Made by a program: the position numbers and the translations under genes
Shown: positions 17,394 to 64,000 of the stretch, piece by piece
Numbering within the stretch: position 1 is the stretch's first letter
How the letters are laid out: every line of letters starts with the position of its first letter
Notes under the pieces: generated by a model
The model's input: the letters and a program-made list of their open reading frames with translations, nothing else
Databases searched by the model: none
Told to the model about the DNA's origin: nothing
Source: Utricularia gibba
Lineage: Eukaryota; Plantae; Magnoliophyta
Direction: 5' to 3'
DNA length: 64,000 bases
NCBI GenBank assembly: GCA_002189035.1
Contig: NEEC01000007.1
Span: 2,728,001-2,792,000, forward strand

Positions 17394-18819
17394 TGTTGCA
17401 GCCATTTTGGGGTAGCCGTGTAAACGCCGTGCAAACTGCAAATGGCCTTTTCACGTGTAGGGAAAATTATATACAACATCCCTACTATTTCACATAATAT
17501 CAAAAATGATCCCCAAATTTTCATGTAAAAAAAACGATTATTTTCCATTGCCAAAATTAATCCCCATACTTTTATTATTATTTATTACACATTCATGTTC
17601 CCCAACATTAGTTGGACCCCAATTTTCAGATGTTTGGCATTATTAGTTCCCATAATTTGCATACCAGCCCTCGTTGTTCAAAAGTCAAAACATTATTAAT
17701 CCGTAATTTTTGAATGTTTTGCCTAATAAATCCAGATTATCTGAATTCAATTAATATTTAATTAAAACATGTTGTGAACATGTTTATTTTATATTTTAGT
17801 ATGTTAGTAACATATTATCAAAATAAATTTTATAATGAAAATATAATCTAAAATAAGAAATTCAAATTAATATTTTATAACTTTTAAAACTATATATTAT
17901 GTTGTAAAGTAATAAATCAATTTATAATAATATAAAAATTATGATTCATATCAAATATTTGATATTTAATTCGTTAACATTTTAAAATTAAAAAATTAAA
18001 AAAGAATTTAAAGAAATAAAGTATTTTTTGAGAAAAAATAACGTTATTAGAAGAAAAATTGTTAGAATGATAATAATAAATCAAAATGAGTAAATTGCAT
18101 TAGGGTTATTTTTTAAAATAAAAAGTTTACATTTTTATTATGAAAAATGAGAAATAACTCTATTCAATAAAGCTATTAATTTCTTATTTTTAAAATAAAA
18201 AAATTATTAATTTTTTAGGTATTACAACTTATAATCTTTTTATACGATATTATTTATTTTAAATATTAAAAACTTACGATCTAACCTTCTTTACTTTAAA
18301 AAAAAAAATGTCTCCTATAAGGTGAGAAGAACATTTTTTTTTACACATTTTCACTTTCATATTCATAATCAATATGAAATATTGTCACTAACCTTCTTAT
18401 TTTATATTCTGTCCTATTTAGTCACTCAGAGTCCTTAGTTAGTGCATTTATGTTTGGTTGTAATACAAATATCAAACTTACACTCTTGATATCATATTGT
18501 TCATTTTAAACACATAATTTTCATGATTTTACATTTTTTTTCGAGTGAAATACCTTATATAAGATTAATAGAATTTATTTATTTAAATACATTATCTTTT
18601 TTGTCTGTCTGTAATTAATTTAAATAATGTCACAGGCCCCTAAGCCTTACAATACATGCGTAACATAGTCTAATTTGTTTTTTTTTTTTTCTTGTTCATT
18701 TCAATTCATTATTCATTCAATTGAAAATGAGAATGAGACCTTCCCTTTATTTTTACTATGAAAATTTATTCTCTTCTCTCTAAAAATTCATACTTTCTTC
18801 TCTACTCAAGAAGTCTAGG

Positions 18820-30780: not shown

Positions 30781-31049
30781 CTTGAATTGCAGTGCCTGCA
30801 ACAACAGCATACAAAACACGAATAAAATGCACAGATCAGCGAAAATTCTCCGTAAACATTACCAAAAAAAGGCATAAACCTAATAAAAGATAATATGTGA
30901 TGATCAATTCAAAGACAAAAATGAAGATGCTGCGAGAGCCGAATCGCTCAAATCTTCGAGGCACCGACGAACCTGAAACCCTAATTTTTGGGTGTTCGAA
31001 ATATGCCCCGCGAGATCCAACCAAACCGGACAAGCTCAGCCCATCTTAT

Positions 31050-31720
31050 CTAAATGGAGTGATGGGGATGCGAATTTCCATAAATACCCACATACATGGA
31101 TTTTTTAAAACTATCTAAAAAAGGATTGTCAAAAATAATTATTTTATATGAATCCGATTACCCAATTATAAAAAAAATAGGCTACAAAATCGAAAATATA
31201 TTATATGGAAAAATAAAAAATATATTATAATATAAGATTAAGAATATTATCTCACCATATCATATTAGTTATAAACAAAAATAGATAACGTAATTAAATA
31301 GAAGAATAATTCTAATTTTGTATGAACTCTTTTTTTTAAAAGAAAAGAATGTAAATTATGAGGATTAAATGTCTAAAACAGATAATATCGTATAAAAAAA
31401 TAAGTGTATCATTACATTTAATATAAAAATTATATTTGGTAAGTGAGTTTTATTTATTAACAATGCATTAACTAGTTGTAATCCAATTGACGTCGTATAG
31501 TATAAGATTTTCGGCTATTCAATAAATTGGGTGTCATTTTAATAATCATTATTTCTTTGGGAATAATATTATATATTTCCAAAATTTGGACATGGGAAAA
31601 GTTTAATTGGGCTCATTTTCTTATATATTTTCATTTTATTATATATTCCAAAAGAAGCCCATGAAGATTAACCGGAAGCTGCTCGCCAATTCCGTTTTGG
31701 GGCCACCCGCTGACAGTTTC
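31050..31720. promoter_or_regulatory. Divergent promoter region between RSZ and DCL3
   Basis: AT-rich spacer with TGACGT (~31489) and site II-like ttgggctc, aagcccat, ggggccac (~31608-31705). Confidence 0.45.
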
Positions 31721-32014
31721 CGGCCTCGTCTGCTCTTCCGGGAACTCTCACGCCGTACAAGATTCTAGGCGTGTTCTTTAAGTGAGTCTGTCGGAGTTCT
31801 TTGAGCTAATGATGCTCTTGTTGCCCCCTTCCTTTGCATTTTTGTGGGTTTATTTTTATGTTGTTTTGGGCCAGGTGGCTCAGTCCTCTATTCGGTGCAT
31901 TTCTATCAGACAGTCATCATGTGCATTGATTTTCTCAGCAGTTGCTTAACTGACTGTAGAGGAGTAGAGTAACGGCTTAAGCCATTGAAGAGAAGATTTT
32001 TGGCCATTTTACTC

Positions 32015-35000
32015 ATGGCGGAGGACCTGGAATGCATAGCCGTGGCGTATGCTCTTCCACCATTTTTTTTTTTTTTTTGCTTTGTATTAAAGGGAAAGAA
32101 TGATGACTTACTATTTTTTTCTATTCTTGTTCTTAATGATGTAGCCATGGTGGCTTAGAAGTATCCAAAGATCTTGGTAACTTGAATCCATGCGAGGAGT
32201 TGCATGAGAAGGTGGATCCAAGTTGTGGAATGCTTCCTTATGGTAAGGAGAGTTCTAAGAATTCTCCTATTTCACCTGAACAACAATTAGCTTCAGGAGC
32301 AGGTAGCTTCCTATGCTCATTCATTCTTGTGCTGATTTTTTAGTGTCCTTGATAACTGGTTCTTTGTTGGGGTGGGCAGGGACAACGAAGAGGAAGGAAT
32401 TGCATGGTTCAGTTGGTGTCAGTGCTCTATGTGGAACCTGGGGACAACAACTACACGGTTCCTCATTCTATGCATACAAAATGGTTTTCTCTTGTAATAT
32501 TCCTGCACAAAGATACTCCAGTTATGTTCTACTATTGGAGACCAAGCTCGAGGATGACGTGGGCAACATTGAAGTCGATCTATTCTTGGTATCAAAGTTT
32601 GTCAGATGTTCTGTTTGCTACTCTGGGCAAATATATCTTGATTCCGAGCAGGTTGTTCCATACATTTTAGATTTAAAACCGTCACAGTTTTTTTTTTCCC
32701 ATATGGTTCCAAGATCCGGTTATTGATATTCCTCTGTTGTAACAGGTAGCTCAGGTGAAACGTTTCCAAGAGCTGATATTTAATGGTTTGTATGGTAAAT
32801 TGTTTGTTGGCGCATCAGGAATCAGGACATTTTTGCTTCATGCAGAGGATTCGTTATGGACTTCATCCAATATGTATTTGCTTTTACCCCTTGAGTCAGA
32901 AAATGGTGCTGGTCAGGGAAAACTGAAGATTAGCTGGACGGGGATAGAATCCTGTGCTTCTGCTGTAGATTTTTTGAAAAAAAATGCTTTATTAAATCGA
33001 CCTAATGTATGTGGTGACAATTCATCGACTGTGGCTGAAACTGGAATTGTAAAATATGATGGAAATTTCATTCACTTGGCCAATAAATCTGCACCTCTGG
33101 ATAGCCTTAATGGGAGGATGGTTATTGCCATACACACTGGAAGAATTTATTTAGTTTTTGATGTCATAGTGAATTCCTCTTCCAGAAGTCCTTTTGAAGA
33201 AAATGCTGATACTGAATATTCATCCTATTCTGATTATTTCTTCAAGAAGTACGCAATTCCAACTACATTTTAATCAATTTCATTGATTTGCATGTTCCTT
33301 AATTTTGTTACTCACAGGTATGGTATAGAACTAGAGCATCCAGAACAGCCTTTGCTTCTTCTGAAGCAAGGCCATAACTCGCATAATCTGCTTGTGGATT
33401 TTAGAAATGAAGGTTGGTATTGTTGGAATATGAGCTGCATCAGAGCTATCATGCACATACTGCTACTCTCAATTAAGTTGTCTTCTGAATAGTAGAGTTA
33501 GTACATTAATTTTTTCCTAGTGACATGCAGAGGATAACCTGTCAAGTTAAAAAGCTCCAAGCTACTTTCATTCTGCATGTTCTCAGGTGGGAAAATGGCT
33601 GTGGAGAAAAAGCCACAACAACATGCTCGCTTGCCTCCAGAACTTCTAGTTGTAACTGATATCAGTACTGATGTCTTGAAGCCCTTCTACTTGTTTCCTT
33701 CAGTAATGCATCGATTAGAGTCTTTCATGTTGGCCAGCCAACTTAGGAAAGAAATTACCGATCATATTGGAAAATGGAAGATTTCTTGCTCACTGGTATC
33801 TTTTCTTTTCTCTTTCCTTTCTCGCTCTGACTTTGTGCAGCAATACAAACTCTGTGTAAATTTGGGAGTTTCCTTCAAACTAAATGGTCTATTAATACAT
33901 GAATATTTCTGCACATAGATTTTGGAGGCCCTAACCACTCTAAGATGTAATGAAACGTTCTCCATGGAGAGACTAGAATTTCTTGGGGATTCTGTTCTGA
34001 AGTATGCAGTAAGCTGCCACCTCTTTCTTAAGCATCCTAAGGAGGACGAATCACGGTTGAGTTCTCGCCGCACAAGGGTTATTAACAACTCATACCTCCA
34101 TAAATTGGGAGTGGATCGCAAATTACAGGTACACAATACTTTGCCTGTGAGATTTATTTCATGTTATTTTTGTTGCTTTTTCTTTTCCCTTATTTGGTTG
34201 CCAAGCTTTTTTTGCATAGTTTACAATTTTCTTAGGTTTACATTCGGGATTGTGCATTTGAACCAAGACGATGGACTGCTCCAGGGCAGAGGCAAATGTG
34301 GCTTTCTCCATGTCAGCATGGCATAGATAGTAGAGAAGTACCTTTTGAAAGCAAGTTCATTAGCGAAGACAAAAGTTTAGTGATTGGGAAAACTTGCAGT
34401 AAGGGCCACAGATGGATGGGTTCAAAAACCATTTCAGATTGTGTTGAAGCTCTAATTGGAGCATACTATGTGGGCTGTGGCTTGTCTGGTGCCATTGATT
34501 TGATGAAGTGGCTTGGAATAGAGACTGCTGTTGAGCCATCACTGATAGAAGATGCCTCCAAAGTTGCTTCACTTCATTCTGTTACTTCAAAAGCCAACGA
34601 TATCAGTGCTGTGGAGTCAAAACTTGGTTATAAATTTTCTAACAAAGGATTGTTGCTGGAAGCCATAACCCATGAAACGCAATCTGTTGATTATTGCTAT
34701 CAGGTATGCAAATATCCTTGGAAGGTCTATTTGCATGTTCTTGATTGCTGATCAAATGGATGATTCTTTTTCTTCAATGGGTGCTAGCGACTCGAATTTC
34801 TTGGTGATGCCGTGCTTGGGTTACTCATCACTCAACATCTCTATGAAAATCACAAAAACATTGATCCTGGAGAGTTGACTGAACTGCGTTCTTTAGCTGT
34901 AAGCAACAATAATTTTGCAATGGCCGCTGTGAGAGGGGACCTTCACGCACACCTCCAGCATAGATCCATCGTTTTTGAAGGTCAGATATTAGAATTTGTA

Positions 35001-36270
35001 AAGTATGTTCGTGCTATGACAACTACATCACTGAAACCAGATGTTATTGCTCCCAAGGTAAGTAAAATTTTGTGTGGGTGCTCTTTTCTTTTTTTTTTTG
35101 GAATTTTCAGTTTCCATCTTTTCTTACTTTTGCCTTGTGGTTAGTACTTGAGATTCTCACATGAATTTGTAGCAATAGAGGCTTTGATCGATCTTGTCTT
35201 GCTTTTGCCTTGTGGTGTTTCATTTAGGTAGGCTCTTGGGGACTTGGTGGAAAGCCTAGCTGGTGCTGTGCTAATTGATTCTAACCTGAATCTGGCTGAA
35301 GTTTGGAGAGTATTTGAGCCTCTTTTATCTCCCATTGTGACCCCTGAGAAGCTCGAGCTTCCGCCTTTTCGTGCACTGACCAATCTCTGCGATGATCTTG
35401 GTTACTACCTCAAAGAGCGTTTCACTCAAAGAGAAAATGCATTTCATCTAGAGCTGAAGCTGCAGCTTGAAGATGCCCTGTTGACCAGTATGGGCATGGC
35501 AGCCACCAAGAAAGCTGCAAAGGGAATGGCAGCCATTCAAATGTTGAAGAAATTACAGGTTTATCTTCATATGTAGATTCCACCTGACTTTTTTTTTTCT
35601 TTTGCATTCCCTCTCCTTTTCAACCAGTTCGGATTTCAGGACAAGGGAATTTCATGCAAAAAGGCTACAGAGCACGCAGACGATGTCGTTGTTATGGAGA
35701 ATCCGAGAAAACAGAACCCATTAATCGTTTGTGAGACACCAGAGGCTTCGACTTGCAACAACAACGCGGATGTTCCAGGTATTCTGTTTGAGCCTATAAA
35801 AGCGGATGTATTGTTTCTCTTGGTGCTTTGACACATCCGCAAGATGCAGATATTTGTACCTAATGTTTGGTTCTTGCAGTGCTGCAAGCGATCGACACAG
35901 TGAAAGGCGGACCGCGCACAGCTCTATTTGCTGTTTGCAAGAAACAGCAATGGCCCAGGCCAACTTTCAATACAAAACAAGAAAACTCAAGGTCAGATTC
36001 TTCACTAGGAGGGTGACTTGTGTTGTTTTCTTCTAATACCTCTCCTAAACTGATGCATTGTTTCTTGAGCATAGAGTACCCATCTGCATCGGTAATGCTG
36101 TTGGCTTCAATAGTTTTGAGTCAGAAATCAGCCTGACGATACCGGATTTCAGAACTATCCAAGTCACTGGAGAAGCAAGGGCTGACAAGAAAAGCTCATT
36201 TGATTCTGCTGCACTTTTGATGCTTCATGAGCTTCAGAGGATGGGAAAGATTGTGATCCAGAAGCAGTAG
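32015..36270 (+). CDS. DCL3: Dicer-like 3-type endoribonuclease lacking the helicase and most of DUF283; 13 exons, ~996 aa
   Basis: DCL3 signature ASGAGTTKRKELHG; PAZ (VIAIHTGRIY..YSDYFFKKYGIELEHPEQPLL); RNase IIIa ERLEFLGDSVLK..TISDCVEALIG; RNase IIIb QRLEFLGDAVL..KALGDLVESLAGA; dsRBDs KGGPRTALFAVCKKQQWPRP and ADKKSSFDSAAL; exon lengths sum to 2991 nt in frame. Confidence 0.92.
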
Positions 36271-36502
36271 TGATAAAACCAACTTCCACCTCTCTAACAT
36301 CAGCTATTTCTGACTCCGATTTATTTCACAAATAAATCAATGCAACATGTTACTCTTCAAGTCAAACATGCCAAGTTTATCCAAACATGCAAGGTGTTTC
36401 ATGCTGCGTGGCTAGTAAAAACCTTGTCTGAATCCTATCTCTAGTTAGCCATCTTCTCATAAGTAGAACCATGAACCATTTAGGCATCCACAGTAAACCT
36501 GG

Positions 36503-58821: not shown

Positions 58822-60157
58822 ATGGGTTCCTTCACGAATCCTTCTCCCACCTCCAAGAATGTAAAGTGAAGAAGCAGAATGCGTTTTTATGTTTAACCTT
58901 TTGGATTTCATAAATCTATTGTTTTTTGTGCAGCAAAAAGAGGGAGGTGGGAGGTTGGGAGTGAGTTTCAGGCCAGAGAATTTCATCCCTGGTCTCATAA
59001 TCGGCTTTATTGTTGGGCTTTTTTTTGATTTATCGAAGGATAAGAAAAATTCTGGCGGAAGGATGATTATTCCGATGCAACCAATTTCTTTCTCTGGTAG
59101 CTCGGATGAAGAGCTCAAAATGGTACTTTTACCTGCTTTGGACATTCGTCTTCTCTTATTTTTGGATGTGGGGTTTTCAGATAATGCCGCTACTTGGAAC
59201 AGTGATGATGAGTAGTCATGTGGTAGAAGTTTTATTAGAAATGCTTCCAGCAACTGGATTATTACCGACTCGCCCTTATCATATTAGATTGCATTTGGTC
59301 TTCCACGGCCGTGGGTTTGAATCTAGTTTAGCAAGACCTGAATTCTGGACCATAACTTTGTTCTGAATTCTGGTCCCCAGGTCCTAGTTGTTAGGCAAGA
59401 CCTGAAGATGGGAGCAGGCAAGGTTGCTTCTCAATGTGCCCGTAAGTTGGTGATATGCTTGTCATGTTTTGTGTATTATACTGTTCTTCAATTGACTGCT
59501 GGGCTTGTGTATGTTTTCAATATTCTTATCTCGCTGTACAGATGCCGCAACTGGTATTTATTCCGAACTAATACAAAGGTTTGATCTTTTTCACTCCCTG
59601 CGTTGCTCAATCGTAGCAAAATCTACTGTTTCAAATATGAGCTGCATAATCTTAACTTGCAGTCACCGAGCTTTCCTTCTGAGACAATGGGAGCGGTGTG
59701 GGCAACCAAAGATTGTTGTTACATGCAAGAATCAGCAAGAAATGTAAGCAGGTGACCTTTCTCTATGCGTGTGAACCTTTTTACCTTGTCCAAAGGATAT
59801 ACCACTTCATGTAAGCAAATGTCATACAACGATTGGGAGTACTGTTAGGAGCAAGTTGAAGGATGCTGCTGAGAGCATCGGCCTCCCTACTTTTGTAGTT
59901 GCGGATGCAGGCCGAACACAGGTACCTTTCAGTATGAGTCCGAGAACTTACTGGGGTTCTGCGCCTTCATCTGCATCTTCTTTTCAGGTTACATCCGGAT
60001 CAAGGACTGTTCTTGCCATCGGACCAGGTTTGTTCAAATCCCAGTTTGTGTGTCCTCTGGTTAGCCTCTGTGTGCATTCCAGTTTTGAGTAGTGTATTCA
60101 TTCCCAGGAAGTAAGTCGGCTGTAGATTCAGTAACTGGAAAGCAGCGGTTGCTCTGA
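58822..60157 (+). CDS. PTH2: Peptidyl-tRNA hydrolase II, multi-exon
   Basis: FRPENFIPGLIIGFI, EELKM|VLVVRQDLKMGAGKVASQCAH, WERCGQPKIVVTC, VADAGRTQV, SRTVLAIGPG, VDSVTGKQRLL*. Confidence 0.93.
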
Positions 60158-62654
60158 AGTTATTCGAGGATAAATTGTGAGATTCTAGTTTCAAAATAGG
60201 CATTGGATGTCACTAGTTCCCACACTTCGGAGGTTTTGCAGAATTAGTCTCCATTGATTACTGCCTATGTTGAGTGTTAAAACGATTTGGGATAATTAAT
60301 TTCAAAATAATGACGTAATTGGTATCCAATATCTTGTAAATTAGTACAATTAGTTTTCAACAATTTTATAGACACTATTGATATACATAATTTGGTAAAA
60401 ATACTCATTCTTTAACACAATTGATATAATTAATTTTCATTTATTTACATATCTGATAAATTAAATTTCCAAAAATGTTTTATAAGTATATCATTTTTAT
60501 CATTATCATTTATATAACTTTTATATTTCAAATGGAATTTTCATTAAACATTCAATCATATTGTTAAAGTAAAAAATATCCCGTTACGCAAACAATATCC
60601 TACAAATATGTGACACCAAGTAACACCCATTAACCACATTATCTATTTTTTTAAGAAAAATGAAAAATATAGAAATTATAGTGGTAAGTGTAACATTTCA
60701 TTAATATTAAAATAATGATTAAATGTGCATATTAGAAGATTTTCTCACATGTATGGATCACAAAATGAAGATTACATGACTCATGAAAGCGAATCCAATC
60801 TTGTTTCAAAAGCAAAGGAAATTATGTTATTTGTTTAAATCGTAATATGATGCAAATAGGATTTTATAACAACATTTTGAAGTTTACAAAATATGGATTT
60901 ATATAAACTCCTTAATATTTTAAATAATTATTATACTAATTATCTGCTAATGATATTTTAATTTTATAGAAAAAAAAAATATAAAATTTGTTAAGAAATC
61001 TAAAAACTAAGTGGAAAATGATCGAGTATGTAATCAATAATGTCTTTTGCTTCAAATTTCTTAAAAATGATAATTATCGTTCGTGAATAAAATGCACAAA
61101 AGATAATGTTTCATCATATGAATAATTTGTAAATAACTCAAATAGAAGTATCGATAATCCTTGAATTTTAAAAAACGTTATAGCACATTCATCTCACTGT
61201 TCTTAGAATACCAAAAACAAACTTATTAATGCCTAATTAATTCATAAAACAATTACAATCAACAACTTGTCAAGTCACAAAATAAAAAAATCTCAAAATT
61301 GAAAGGTCATTGAAGAGGAACTAGATGTAAAAATCTTAACACATAAAGTGCAACATACAATAATGAGAGTAAAAGCCACTAAACTATTTATGAATGTTTA
61401 TTGGATGTTATTGAGTGAAATACCCGAATTTGAGTTTTGATTTTAATGAGTACCATTAAACATTCTCTTTATAAGTGTCATCGAGTGTTTTTTAGTGTAA
61501 GAGTATTTCAAAAATTGTACAAAAGTGTAAGTAATATATTGATGATGAGAAGTTTTTATAAGCAATACAATTTCATAAAGGATTAAAATACATTTTATTA
61601 AAAAAGTTTATTTTAATTATGCCATTTTTTCCAAAAAGGGTAAATTGTTTGGTCAAAAGTTCCATGTTAATAAAATTATAGGATCAAATATGTTAATAAA
61701 ATTATAGAATCAAATATGTTAATAGAATAAATTTTCATGATCCAAACTGAATTTACAATATAATAATTATAGCGATTTTCTTAATAAGTATATGAAAATT
61801 TCCAAAATGATTGATATATTAAAACTATGATGGTTACTTTGTTAAAAATACGAAAACAATGAGGTTGAGATTGTCAATTCTTCATTAAATTATATTTTCA
61901 AAACTATTTAATCTATCTAATTTTCTATTAAGATTTAAATCGCTAATAGATGAATTTTTCAAAATTGTTTAGATATGTAATTCTTCATATTATATTAATT
62001 TAACAAACGTATGATTAATATATAATATTGAACATAAAATAATATTTCATATTCTAATTATTACAAATTAGAAGAAATTGTATGTAACTTTAAAAAATCA
62101 TTTATATTCATTACACAGAATATATATAGATTTATAAGATAGAGAACAAAAAAAGTATAAATATATTATTTTACAATTTTAATTTGTAAAATACATATTT
62201 TTTATTTGAGTTGATAAAATACGAAAAAAATTATAAAATACATCAATTGATGTTTTTAATTTGTAAAATATATTCTTTTGCTTTTAGTTTGTATAATATA
62301 TAATTTTATATTTTTTTGTTTACAAAATACATTTTAACATATTAAGTTTATTAATAAATGTAATTAACAATCAAAAATATATGAACACTTTTACAAAAAT
62401 ATTTTTTATGAATGATATACCTTGTGGATTATTTGAACAGTACTATATGGTTGGTTGAATAAAAAATTCTTTCTATATTTTATTTTGATTAAACTATTAG
62501 AAATGTATGAACATAACATATGAATGACTAATTCAAATATACTTAGATGATTAAATATTAAATGATGTCTCAATTTCTCTTTGATTAAATTGACTTCTTC
62601 TTCATTTCCACACTTTCCAACTATATCCTATGTTTAGTTTACTCCAAGAATTTA

Positions 62655-64000
62655 TTGCACGCAATTACCATGTCGAATGTTTCAATCAGTACATTCTCTG
62701 ACGGAAATATCATGAGAAATCAATATTTCAATTCTATTATATATGATTGTGAAGGCATAAAGGTGGTTCTAATGAAATCTACAATATCACTAGAATGGTT
62801 TATCAAGATTTATGAGCATGAGATAAATATAATTTTAAATTTTCATTTTATTCATATGAAAATAATATTTTATGATTTCAACACTCACAACTTCAATTTC
62901 TTATTGATTTAGGATGAAGCCGAGCTACGGTACAACTTCAATCCATTAAACTCACAATACGATGTATACTTGTATATTATTGACGATAGCATGGATCAAA
63001 ATGTTTCTTCTAGTTTTGTCATAAGTACAATATTTTAAGAATATGATTTTATTTTGATTTTTAACGCATTAAAACTGCAAATTTATATTATATTATATTA
63101 TATATATATATATTAAATTTTTAATATATAATGATATAAATACTTATTATAGGATTATGTAATATTTTATTAATACACACGATTCATTAAATTCACAGTT
63201 ACATTATCAATATACTAGCATGTCATGTTAATATGATGATAATATTTCTTTTTTTCATTAATGATTAACTTAAAATACTTAGATAATTGATTTTAAAAAC
63301 TAATTTATTATTAATATCAAGTTAATTTGCATAAACGAAGAATAATTTCCATGAAAATAATAATTATGAAAATAAAATTTGTAAAAAGATTTGAGGATTT
63401 TAGTAATAAAATATTGATATAAAAGTATAAACTATTTTAGATAATTAAAAAAATTAATAACTATTTAGATTAAAAAAAAATTATTAATTTACAATAGGAA
63501 AATTATTAATTTTGAGAATTGTTCCTAATTATTCATTTTTCTAATAATTTTTCATGAATAACAATTACTTAATTGATTCGATACCAATAATATTTCAATG
63601 AAAAATACTATCAAAATTTGTACAACTCGCTTTCATCGTTTTACACACAATGAGATTTAGGCTCGTTTGAGTTTCCACATCCTTAACCATTCGAGCTACA
63701 TGACGAAAACACTCCTTTCGTCAATGACCCCATGGAGGAGGATTAGGAATTTTAGAGTACAACGACGATAAAAATTTAGATTATACTGTAGATACTACCA
63801 AGAGTGACTCCAATAATGAATTCAACTTGATATCAAAGGAGGTGGCTATGGCAATAGGCGCATTGCACGACGGAGACATAGGTGATGCACTCCTTGTTTG
63901 GGTAAATGACAATGAAGCAATTTTTTATGACTTGGAAGAAAGTCTCTCCATAGATTATTACAATCGAATCCCACTTAAAGATATACAACAAGCAAAGGGT
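62655..64000 (+). mobile_element. Possible decayed Mutator-like (MULE) coding relic, running off the right edge
   Basis: YDCEGIKVVLMKSTISLEWFIKIYE resembles recalled N-terminal regions of plant MULE proteins; an acidic frame is open from 63728 to the window end; no catalytic motifs visible. Confidence 0.25.

What the first reader, a model, noticed from the sequence alone, without database searches (positions are those of the whole stretch)
32015..36270. Intact helicase-less DCL3 ('mini-Dicer', ~996 aa)
Seen: 13 exons join in frame with intact RNase IIIa and IIIb catalytic signatures, Platform/PAZ and two dsRBD-like regions. The protein starts only ~60 aa before GTTKRKELHG, and that stretch (SKDLGNLNPCEELH) looks like the last helix of DUF283 (recalled DCL3 consensus SKQLVCLEACKKLH). 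No DExD/Helicase-C exons are visible upstream, where the opposite-strand RSZ gene, a Ran relic and AIG2-like lie. Established: plant DCL3 proteins are roughly 1600 aa with an N-terminal helicase, and Arabidopsis DCL3 dices short Pol IV/RDR2 duplexes by end-measuring with Platform-PAZ without needing ATP; Giardia Dicer is a natural helicase-less Dicer. Inference: this could be a streamlined but active 24-nt siRNA Dicer. The flanking RSZ, mS47, MYB3R, TIP4;1 and PTH2 genes suggest an ancestral eudicot block, so this may be the true ortholog rather than a stray fragment.
Basis: partly seen in the sequence, partly recalled or inferred. Interest (0 to 1): 0.85.

Follow-up and report, generated by a model that had tools for sequence, protein, structure and literature searches.

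The report
Published helicase-less DCL3 of Utricularia gibba
This is the truncated, helicase-less Dicer-like 3 gene of the bladderwort Utricularia gibba, already published in 2021; new here is that the kept part has stayed under selection, while public transcript assemblies show a splice form that breaks its reading frame.

Summary
Thirteen GT-AG exons (32015-36270, +) give a 2991-nt CDS and a 996-aa protein with Platform-PAZ, RNase IIIa and IIIb with all catalytic acidic residues, and C-terminal dsRBD regions. No helicase or DUF283 exon lies anywhere in the 64-kb window.

It is not new. Cervantes-Perez et al. 2021 (PMC8333044) describe UgDCL3 (unitig_37.g12915.t1) as 996 aa, 2991 bp and 13 exons, with only PAZ and two RNase III domains. 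They confirmed it by RNA-seq and 5' RACE.

Added here:
- RNA contigs show the gene has its own spliced leader and no upstream exons.
- On the U. gibba branch, dN/dS is about 0.2 for exons 3-13, the same as in full-length orthologs. It is about 1.3 for the DUF283 stub. So the helicase loss looks old and the remainder stayed constrained.
- Exon 10 carries a 4-nt insertion absent from five orthologs. The annotated in-frame acceptor was created by that insertion. Transcript contigs from the two informative runs use the ancestral AG instead, which shifts the frame and removes half of RNase IIIb and both dsRBDs.

The "ancestral synteny block" idea found no support. Whether the protein is active today remains untested.

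The parts
31650..31781 (+). Non-coding leader exon; the 5' end is approximate
   Evidence: RNA contig depth is zero from 31087 to 31647 in all four runs and begins in the 31648-31834 bin. The donor is 31781|GT. The paper's 5' RACE also found no helicase exons.
31782..31938 (+). Leader intron, with an alternative acceptor at 31873-74 (exon then starts at 31875)
   Evidence: Joints 31781>31875 and 31779/81>31939 in run X1. The GT..AG borders were read.
31939..32046 (+). Exon carrying the start codon (ATG at 32015; CDS exon 1 is 32015-32046, MAEDLECIAVA). It has no detectable homology to DCL3 N-termini.
   Evidence: The 108 unplaced letters at the end of X1 record 1 equal the length of 31939-32046.
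32145..32302 (+). CDS exon 2: relic of the last DUF283 helix plus linker, evolving neutrally
   Evidence: It aligns to Sesamum and Paulownia DUF283-end exons. dN/dS is 1.3 on the U. gibba branch, and 5 of 10 conserved columns are lost, two of them to proline.
32380..33795 (+). CDS exons 3-6 (32380-32651, 32746-33248, 33318-33412, 33587-33795): Platform, PAZ and connector
   Evidence: Matches 7vg2 DCL3 residues 767-937 at E 3e-34. 80 of 85 columns conserved at >=95% are kept, and the losses are conservative. Introns 2-5 are confirmed by RNA contigs.
33919..34703 (+). CDS exons 7-8 (33919-34128, 34236-34703): RNase IIIa (E440, E443, D447, D561, E564) and the IIIa-IIIb linker
   Evidence: Pfam PF00636 at 48.7 bits; motifs located; intron 7 confirmed in four runs.
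34788..35057 (+). CDS exon 9: N-terminal half of RNase IIIb (E652, D656). An alternative donor after 34980 is seen in run X2.
   Evidence: Pfam PF00636 at 57.2 bits.
35226..35231 (+). Tandem acceptors AG 35226-27 (ancestral position) and AG 35230-31 (annotated, in frame), produced by a 4-nt insertion specific to this lineage
   Evidence: Five orthologs carry a single acceptor directly followed by GTACTYGG or GCTCTTGG. X1 and X2 contigs join onto 35228, which is +4 nt and gives a stop after 16 shifted codons (X1 form: 755 residues), with the stop as codon 756.
35232..35558 (+). CDS exon 10: C-terminal half of RNase IIIb (D743, E746) and the first dsRBD-like region
   Evidence: It is in frame only through acceptor 35230-31.
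35640..36270 (+). CDS exons 11-13 (35640-35778, 35880-35991, 36075-36270): variable linker, second dsRBD-like region, and stop codon at 36268-36270
   Evidence: Introns 10-12 are confirmed by RNA contigs.

Best explanation
The locus is DCL3 of Utricularia gibba (UgDCL3, unitig_37.g12915), the Lamiales DCL3 ortholog. Everything 5' of the last DUF283 exon has been lost from the genome. The remainder is transcribed from its own promoter through a new spliced leader and a new 11-codon first exon.

The annotated product (996 aa) is a Platform-PAZ-RNase IIIa-RNase IIIb-dsRBD module with every catalytic acidic residue in place.

Inferred mechanism: like Arabidopsis DCL3, it would bind the ends of short Pol IV/RDR2 duplexes in the Platform-PAZ pockets. 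It would then cut both strands at a fixed distance with the paired RNase III domains, giving 24/23-nt siRNAs. Arabidopsis DCL3 does this without ATP.

The selection pattern (neutral DUF283 stub, constrained remainder) indicates that the helicase-less protein worked for most of this lineage's history.

Today its output is probably reduced. A 4-nt insertion at the start of exon 10 left the ancestral acceptor in place, so the assembled transcripts are frame-shifted there. Only splicing at the new AG, 4 nt downstream, yields the full enzyme. This would make UgDCL3 a natural hypomorph, which fits the low but non-zero 24-nt siRNA level reported for the species.

Shown: gene structure, absence of helicase exons in the window, transcription and splice junctions, the insertion, and the dN/dS values. 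Inferred: dicing activity, hypomorphy, and the age of the truncation.

The confidence of 0.6 is for the whole statement, including present-day partial activity. That the locus is the published truncated UgDCL3 I put at about 0.95.
For: Identity:
- The model has 996 aa, 2991 nt and 13 exons. Those are exactly the figures for UgDCL3 in PMC8333044 Fig. S17, which also reports only PAZ plus two RNase III domains and confirmation by 5' RACE.
- The best relatives are Lamiales DCL3 at 57-61% identity, and the protein nests in core Lamiales on a long branch.
- Intron positions are collinear with Sesamum.

No helicase:
- tblastn is blank for residues 1 to ~600 of 11 DCL3 proteins.
- RNA depth is zero upstream of about 31650 and no loose ends appear at the leader.

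Constraint:
- U. gibba branch dN/dS is 0.18-0.21 for exons 3-13, against 0.17 for Sesamum and 0.145 for Paulownia.
- Exon 2 gives 1.3, with pN 0.40 close to pS. Fisher p is 0.007 for N:S counts and 0.0006 for conserved columns lost, 5/10 against 19/264.
- A divergent accession (X1) differs by 8 synonymous and 6 non-synonymous changes.

Frame-shifting acceptor.

Plausibility of activity:
- AtDCL3 needs no ATP, and its IIIa/IIIb glutamates E1146 and E1329 are the catalytic ones (PMC8846587).
- The PAZ domain alone sets end preference in DCL3 proteins (PMC9071481).
- U. gibba still has many 24-nt siRNA loci in TE-dense regions; 24-nt reads are 14.4% of sRNA reads.
Against: - No biochemical or genetic test of UgDCL3 exists.
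- The authors of PMC8333044 read the low 24-nt siRNA level, low methylation and ovule defects as loss of DCL3 function or a dominant-negative effect.
- The annotated 35057|35232 junction was not seen in any of four RNA runs. The +4 form lacks D743, E746 and both dsRBDs.
- Contigs drop minor variants, so the share of the in-frame form is unknown.
- The exon 2 estimate rests on 26 codons.
- U. gibba synonymous sites are near saturation (pS about 0.5), which blurs dN/dS.
- Downstream of the insertion, the X1 differences are 3 non-synonymous to 1 synonymous. That is too few to judge (p 0.24).
- The organism is inferred from the exact match to the paper's figures. No tool named it.
Confidence: 0.6

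Rival explanations
1. UgDCL3 no longer works as a Dicer. It is either a young pseudogene whose ORF has not yet decayed, or its products only interfere with other DCL complexes (the dominant-negative idea of PMC8333044).
For: - The assembled transcripts of X1 and X2 are frame-shifted at exon 10 and would end after 755 or 723 residues, without the second half of RNase IIIb and without dsRBDs.
- The 4-nt insertion is absent from five orthologs.
- The species has few 24-nt siRNAs, low CHH methylation and dcl3-like ovule defects.
- Non-synonymous differences dominate downstream of the insertion in X1 (3:1).
Against: - dN/dS is about 0.2 over exons 3-13, including 0.19-0.24 for exons 10-13, on a long branch with pS about 0.5.
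- 245 of 264 strongly conserved columns are kept and all catalytic residues are intact.
- All 24 splice sites are canonical and there is no stop in 996 codons.
- 24-nt siRNA loci persist at TE-rich regions.
- A gene dead since the truncation should look like exon 2 throughout.
Confidence: 0.27
2. The main product is the 755-residue protein from the +4 splice form (Platform-PAZ, RNase IIIa and half of IIIb). It has a non-dicing role, for example as a dsRNA-end binder, a nickase, or a regulator made by alternative splicing coupled to mRNA decay.
For: The +4 junction is the only one seen across intron 9 in the assembled transcripts of the two informative runs, which come from two studies. The upstream AG sits at the ancestral acceptor position behind the pyrimidine tract.
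Against: - A half RNase IIIb domain is unlikely to fold against IIIa. This is an inference from the known intramolecular IIIa/IIIb dimer of Dicers.
- The stop lies more than 50 nt upstream of three further junctions, which is typical of an NMD target.
- Exons 10-13 remain constrained, which a protein ending before them cannot explain.
Confidence: 0.08
3. The truncation is an assembly or annotation artefact, and the helicase exons exist upstream or on another contig and are spliced on.
For: Helicase-less DCL3 gene models are common in other annotations and are often split models. A genome-wide search could not be run here.
Against: - No helicase or DUF283 similarity exists in the 32 kb upstream or 28 kb downstream.
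- RNA contigs start at a leader about 350 nt upstream of the ATG, with zero depth before it and no loose ends.
- The paper's 5' RACE and RNA-seq on a PacBio assembly agree.
- The DUF283 stub has decayed, with prolines in the helix.
Confidence: 0.03

Closest known systems
UgDCL3 (unitig_37.g12915.t1) of Utricularia gibba, Cervantes-Perez et al. 2021, Sci Rep 11:15725 (PMC8333044)
   Same: It is the same gene: 996 aa, 2991-bp CDS, 13 exons, PAZ plus two RNase III domains, about 600 N-terminal residues missing, transcribed, and 5' RACE-verified.
   Different: In what was read of the paper here, it treats the protein as non-functional or dominant-negative, and no mention was seen of the 4-nt insertion and tandem acceptor at exon 10, the frame-shifted assembled transcripts, or the contrast between a neutral DUF283 stub and a constrained remainder.
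Arabidopsis thaliana DCL3 (PDB 7vg2/7vg3; Wang et al. 2021; Loffer et al. 2022, PMC8846587)
   Same: Homologous Platform-PAZ (E 3e-34), paired RNase III domains with the same catalytic motifs, and C-terminal dsRBDs. AtDCL3 dices short duplexes by end-measuring without ATP.
   Different: AtDCL3 has an N-terminal DExD/H helicase, Helicase_C and DUF283 (about 1580 aa). The window gene has none of these apart from one decayed helix.
Mouse oocyte Dicer(O) isoform (Flemr et al. 2013; cited from my own knowledge, not checked here)
   Same: A natural Dicer lacking the N-terminal helicase part, driven by a new promoter and first exon, and still active (more active on long dsRNA).
   Different: Dicer(O) is an alternative isoform of an intact gene, driven by a retrotransposon promoter. 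In U. gibba the helicase exons are gone from the locus, and no transposon origin of the leader was found.
Giardia intestinalis Dicer (MacRae et al. 2006; cited from my own knowledge, not checked here)
   Same: A minimal Platform-PAZ-connector-2x RNase III ruler that measures from the end without a helicase.
   Different: Giardia Dicer also lacks dsRBDs and is an ancient lineage feature. UgDCL3 is a secondary truncation of a canonical plant DCL3 and keeps its dsRBDs.

Membership tests
Plant DICER-LIKE 3 (DCL3) | Orthology: groups with DCL3 proteins at the species-tree position and shares their intron positions | tested here: met
   57-61% identity to Lamiales DCL3. Nested in core Lamiales with 100/99 support. 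Exons collinear with Sesamum, Paulownia and Buddleja.
Plant DICER-LIKE 3 (DCL3) | Platform-PAZ cassette of DCL3 type | tested here: met
   Exon 4 matches AtDCL3 7vg2 residues 767-937 at E 3e-34. 80 of 85 strongly conserved columns are kept in exons 3-6. Pfam PAZ on the single exon is only 12.3 bits because introns split the domain.
Plant DICER-LIKE 3 (DCL3) | Two RNase III domains with catalytic E/D...D/E residues | tested here: met
   PF00636 scores 48.7 and 57.2 bits. The motifs are at 440-448, 561-569, 649-657 and 741-750. This holds at the DNA level and for the annotated splice form only. The +4 transcript loses D743 and E746.
Plant DICER-LIKE 3 (DCL3) | C-terminal dsRNA-binding domains | tested here: inconclusive
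   Exon-wise Pfam hits are weak (dsrm E 0.07; DND1_DSRM E 0.001). The protein aligns to the end of full-length DCL3s, and 21 of 22 conserved columns are kept in exons 12-13.
Plant DICER-LIKE 3 (DCL3) | N-terminal DExD/H helicase plus Helicase_C | tested here: not met
   No tblastn match to residues 1 to ~600 of 11 DCL3 proteins in the 64-kb window at E<=10. Transcripts start at about 31650.
Plant DICER-LIKE 3 (DCL3) | DUF283 / Dicer dimerisation domain | tested here: not met
   Only the last helix remains in exon 2. It has lost 5 of 10 conserved residues (two replaced by proline) and shows dN/dS 1.3.
Plant DICER-LIKE 3 (DCL3) | Produces 24-nt siRNAs from Pol IV/RDR2 duplexes | not testable with these tools
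   Indirect only: U. gibba has 24-nt siRNA loci in TE-dense regions, but 24-nt reads are only 14.4% of sRNA reads (PMC8333044).
Naturally helicase-less Dicers (Giardia type, mouse Dicer(O)) | Platform-PAZ plus paired RNase III, without a helicase, shown to dice | tested here: inconclusive
   The architecture is met. Activity is untested, and the assembled mRNA form seen here is frame-shifted in RNase IIIb.

The most novel reading that the evidence does not exclude
UgDCL3 has worked as a helicase-free, ATP-independent 24-nt Dicer for most of the history of its lineage: the retained domains show dN/dS about 0.2 and the DUF283 stub about 1. Its output is now throttled by a frame-shifting tandem acceptor created by a 4-nt insertion, so only a minor splice form encodes the full enzyme. 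That would make it a natural DCL3 hypomorph, explaining the low but non-zero 24-nt siRNA and CHH methylation levels of this compact genome.
Probability: 0.3. Interest if true: 0.6.

Novelty: already known. Interest (0 to 1): 0.3.

Why it matters
The helicase-less DCL3 of U. gibba is already in the literature, so the core finding adds nothing.

Two open points are sharpened here:
- The selection pattern argues that a plant DCL3 can do without its helicase and DUF283 for a long evolutionary time. That fits the ATP-independent, end-measuring mechanism shown for Arabidopsis DCL3 and gives a natural test case for what the DCL3 helicase is for.
- The published 996-aa model may hide a splice-dependent frameshift. 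If the frame-shifted form dominates, the weak RdDM of this species would owe more to that lesion than to the missing helicase.

Both points can be checked cheaply with existing reads and a dicing assay.

Tried and rejected
- Profile search from fragments: I aligned the exon peptides with a Sesamum DCL3 piece to build a profile (A1). MAFFT scattered the fragments, so the alignment was not used for searching.
- Close relatives: searches for Lentibulariaceae relatives found none. The exon 4 query gave at most 55% identity among 92-292-aa proteins. Two searches with full-length-sized queries listed no protein closer than other Lamiales, and not the window's own protein. So I could not test whether the truncation or the 4-nt insertion is shared with Genlisea, Pinguicula or other Utricularia.
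- Missing record: Sesamum indicum DCL3 (P0099) was not on record for a locus.
- Origin of the leader: I looked for a remnant of the ancestral DCL3 5' end or N-terminus in 31000-32400 with blastn against the Sesamum 5' region and blastx against ~200 DCL3 proteins. Only poly-T matches appeared.
- Synteny: five DCL3 loci share no neighbours with the window.
- Tying the window to unitig_37: neither of the two unitig_37 miRNAs listed in the paper's supplement is in this window, and the supplement holds no UgDCL3 sequence or primers.
- Whole-protein tools: the spliced 996-aa protein could not be passed to Pfam, structure prediction or cluster look-up, because it has no single reference and I did not type it in.
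- Read-level support: only one read-laying run was allowed and the runs are stored as contigs, so splice-form ratios could not be measured.
Full report
WHAT IS THERE

I rebuilt the gene from the sequence. Thirteen exons between 32015 and 36270 on the + strand, all with GT..AG borders, join into a 2991-nt CDS. It encodes 996 residues with a single terminal stop.

Domain evidence:
- Pfam on single exons finds Ribonuclease_3 above threshold on exon 7 (48.7 bits) and exon 9 (57.2 bits). PAZ and dsRBD signals are weak because introns split those domains.
- Exon 4 matches the Platform/PAZ region of Arabidopsis DCL3 (7vg2, chain residues 767-937, E 3e-34).
- The four catalytic motifs are intact: ERLEFLGDS at 440-448, DCVEALIGA at 561-569, QRLEFLGDA at 649-657 and LGDLVESLAG at 741-750.

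NO HELICASE

- tblastn of eleven full-length DCL3 proteins against the whole window, both strands, E<=10, finds nothing for their first ~600 residues. Homology starts at about residue 607-676 of the full-length proteins, which is residue 15-17 of the model.
- Against the Sesamum alatum locus, collinear homology begins at the exon encoding the end of DUF283 and runs exon by exon to the stop. The 6.5 kb of Sesamum helicase and DUF283 exons have no counterpart.
- The region 31000-32144 shows no similarity to DCL3 5' regions or N-termini. The leader and the 11-codon first exon are therefore new or unrecognisable.

ALREADY PUBLISHED

The nearest relatives are Lamiales DCL3. In a maximum-likelihood tree the protein nests inside core Lamiales (100/99 support) on a long terminal branch of 0.68, against a median of 0.17.

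Cervantes-Perez et al. 2021 (Sci Rep 11:15725, PMC8333044) describe Utricularia gibba DCL3, unitig_37.g12915.t1, as follows:
- 996 aa, a 2991-bp CDS and 13 exons.
- Only PAZ and two RNase III domains.
- About 600 N-terminal residues missing.
- Confirmed by RNA-seq and 5' RACE.

All three numbers equal those of my model. I take the window to be that locus. No later primary work on this protein turned up.

TRANSCRIPTS

Contigs of four public RNA runs of the same organism were laid on 30900-36500.
- They confirm introns 2, 3, 4, 5, 7, 8, 10, 11 and 12 exactly.
- Introns 1 and 6 fall in skipped low-complexity stretches, but they agree with contig lengths.
- Depth is zero from 31087 to 31647.
- A leader exon ends at 31781 and is spliced to 31939, or alternatively to 31875.
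- No contig carries foreign sequence upstream.

So the gene has its own start about 350 nt before the ATG, in line with the paper's 5' RACE.

A HIDDEN FRAMESHIFT

Across intron 9 the annotated junction 35057|35232 is never seen. X1 joins 35057 to 35228, and X2 joins an alternative donor at 34980 to 35228. Record lengths fit only these forms.

The DNA reads tttag|GTAG|GCTCTTGGGGAC. Sesamum, Paulownia, Buddleja and potato have a single acceptor followed directly by GTACTYGG. Cacao has one followed by GCTCTTGG. U. gibba thus carries a 4-nt insertion, and that insertion created the second AG (35230-31) that gene models use to keep the frame.

Splicing at the ancestral AG (35226-27) adds GTAG and shifts the frame. 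The X1 form ends after 755 residues, with the stop as codon 756. The X2 form ends after 723 residues, with the stop as codon 724. Both lose D743, E746 and both dsRBDs.

Two limits apply. Contigs keep only the dominant path and prove presence, not absence. X3 and X4 are uninformative at this junction. The share of the in-frame form is therefore unknown.

SELECTION

I took codons from the Sesamum, Paulownia and Buddleja loci. The ancestor was defined as codons identical in the outgroups; the tree shows Buddleja branching outside. Nei-Gojobori counts on the U. gibba branch give the following:

| Region | dN/dS on the U. gibba branch | Comparison |
|---|---|---|
| Exons 3-13 | 0.18-0.21 | Sesamum 0.17, Paulownia 0.145 |
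| Exons 10-13 | 0.19-0.24 | |
| Exon 2 (DUF283 stub, 26 codons) | 1.3 (pN 0.40, close to pS 0.33-0.47) | Sesamum versus Paulownia over the same stretch: 0.25 |

The exon 2 contrast is significant for N:S counts (Fisher p 0.007). It is also significant for columns conserved at >=95% among 106 DCL3 proteins: 5 of 10 are lost in exon 2, against 19 of 264 elsewhere (p 0.0006).

A divergent accession (X1) differs from the reference by 8 synonymous and 6 non-synonymous changes. Seven of the synonymous and three of the non-synonymous changes lie upstream of the insertion, and one synonymous and three non-synonymous lie downstream. That split is too small to test (p 0.24).

Inference: the stub has drifted neutrally for about the whole branch, so the helicase loss is old. 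The rest of the protein stayed constrained during that time, so the truncated protein had a function. The 4-nt insertion is either recent, or it is tolerated because the new AG is used.

MECHANISM

Arabidopsis DCL3 needs neither ATP binding nor hydrolysis. RNase IIIb cuts the measured 24-nt strand and IIIa cuts the partner strand, with E1329 and E1146 as the catalytic glutamates (PMC8846587). In DCL3-family enzymes the PAZ domain alone sets end preference (PMC9071481).

All these parts are present in the 996-aa product, and the few conserved columns lost in Platform-PAZ are conservative changes. U. gibba still has many 24-nt siRNA loci in TE-dense regions, although 24-nt reads are only 14.4% of sRNA reads.

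The best reading is a helicase-less DCL3 that can still dice short duplexes but is now a hypomorph. The rivals are complete loss of function or dominant-negative action (the authors' view), a non-dicing role of the 755-residue product, and an artefact. The artefact reading is largely excluded.

SYNTENY

The three Lamiales loci share a 3beta-HSD/reticulon gene downstream of DCL3. Potato and cacao have other neighbours. tblastx of all ten 10-kb flanks against the whole window gives no hit of 40 bits or more.

Orthology rests on the tree and the shared intron positions.

VERDICT

This is a real feature, correctly described, and already published. New but provisional points are the old, selectively maintained truncation and the splice-dependent frameshift at exon 10. 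Interest is low to moderate.

Noticed in passing
window 35226-35231: The published and predicted 996-aa model depends on an acceptor AG created by a lineage-specific 4-nt insertion. This looks like a case where gene prediction hides a frameshift by moving a splice site.
   Followed up: yes
window 34980/34981: Alternative donor inside exon 9 (GT at 34981-82), used in the X2 contig. It removes 77 nt of the N-terminal half of RNase IIIb and is frame-shifted with either acceptor.
   Followed up: partly
window 30972-31006: A 35-nt stretch is matched by a highly covered RNA contig (depth 140 in X1) whose flanks do not match the window.
   Followed up: no
window 31661-31768: An ATG-initiated 36-codon ORF lies in the leader exon. 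It would be an upstream ORF if transcription starts before 31661.
   Followed up: no
window 32145-32298 (run X1): The divergent accession X1 differs at 4 of 154 positions in exon 2 (2.6%), against about 0.5-0.7% in the other coding exons. This fits relaxed constraint on the DUF283 stub. The positions were not listed by the tool.
   Followed up: partly
proteins P0089, P0092, P0094, P0104, P0117, P0174, P0232: Other annotations also hold DCL3 models without DEAD/Helicase_C domains: Penstemon davidsonii 1131 aa, P. smallii 1027 aa, Primulina huaijiensis 'DCL3b isoform X1' 1098 aa, Forsythia ovata 910 aa, Escallonia rubra 1039 aa, Gastrolobium bilobum 1039 aa and Dionaea muscipula 1195 aa. They may be split gene models or real short forms.
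   Followed up: no
L001 24591-29659, L002 30159-36780, L003 23201-29910: A 3beta-HSD/reticulon gene on the opposite strand is the conserved downstream neighbour of DCL3 in Sesamum, Paulownia and Buddleja. It is absent from the U. gibba window.
   Followed up: partly
window 60001-64000: The last 4 kb of the window is very AT-rich (GC 0.23-0.25, against about 0.40 elsewhere).
   Followed up: no
window 31330-31401 and 18234-18306: A 73-nt inverted match (78% identity) links the putative UgDCL3 promoter region and a site 13 kb upstream. Both are AT-rich, so it may be a small repeat or chance.
   Followed up: no
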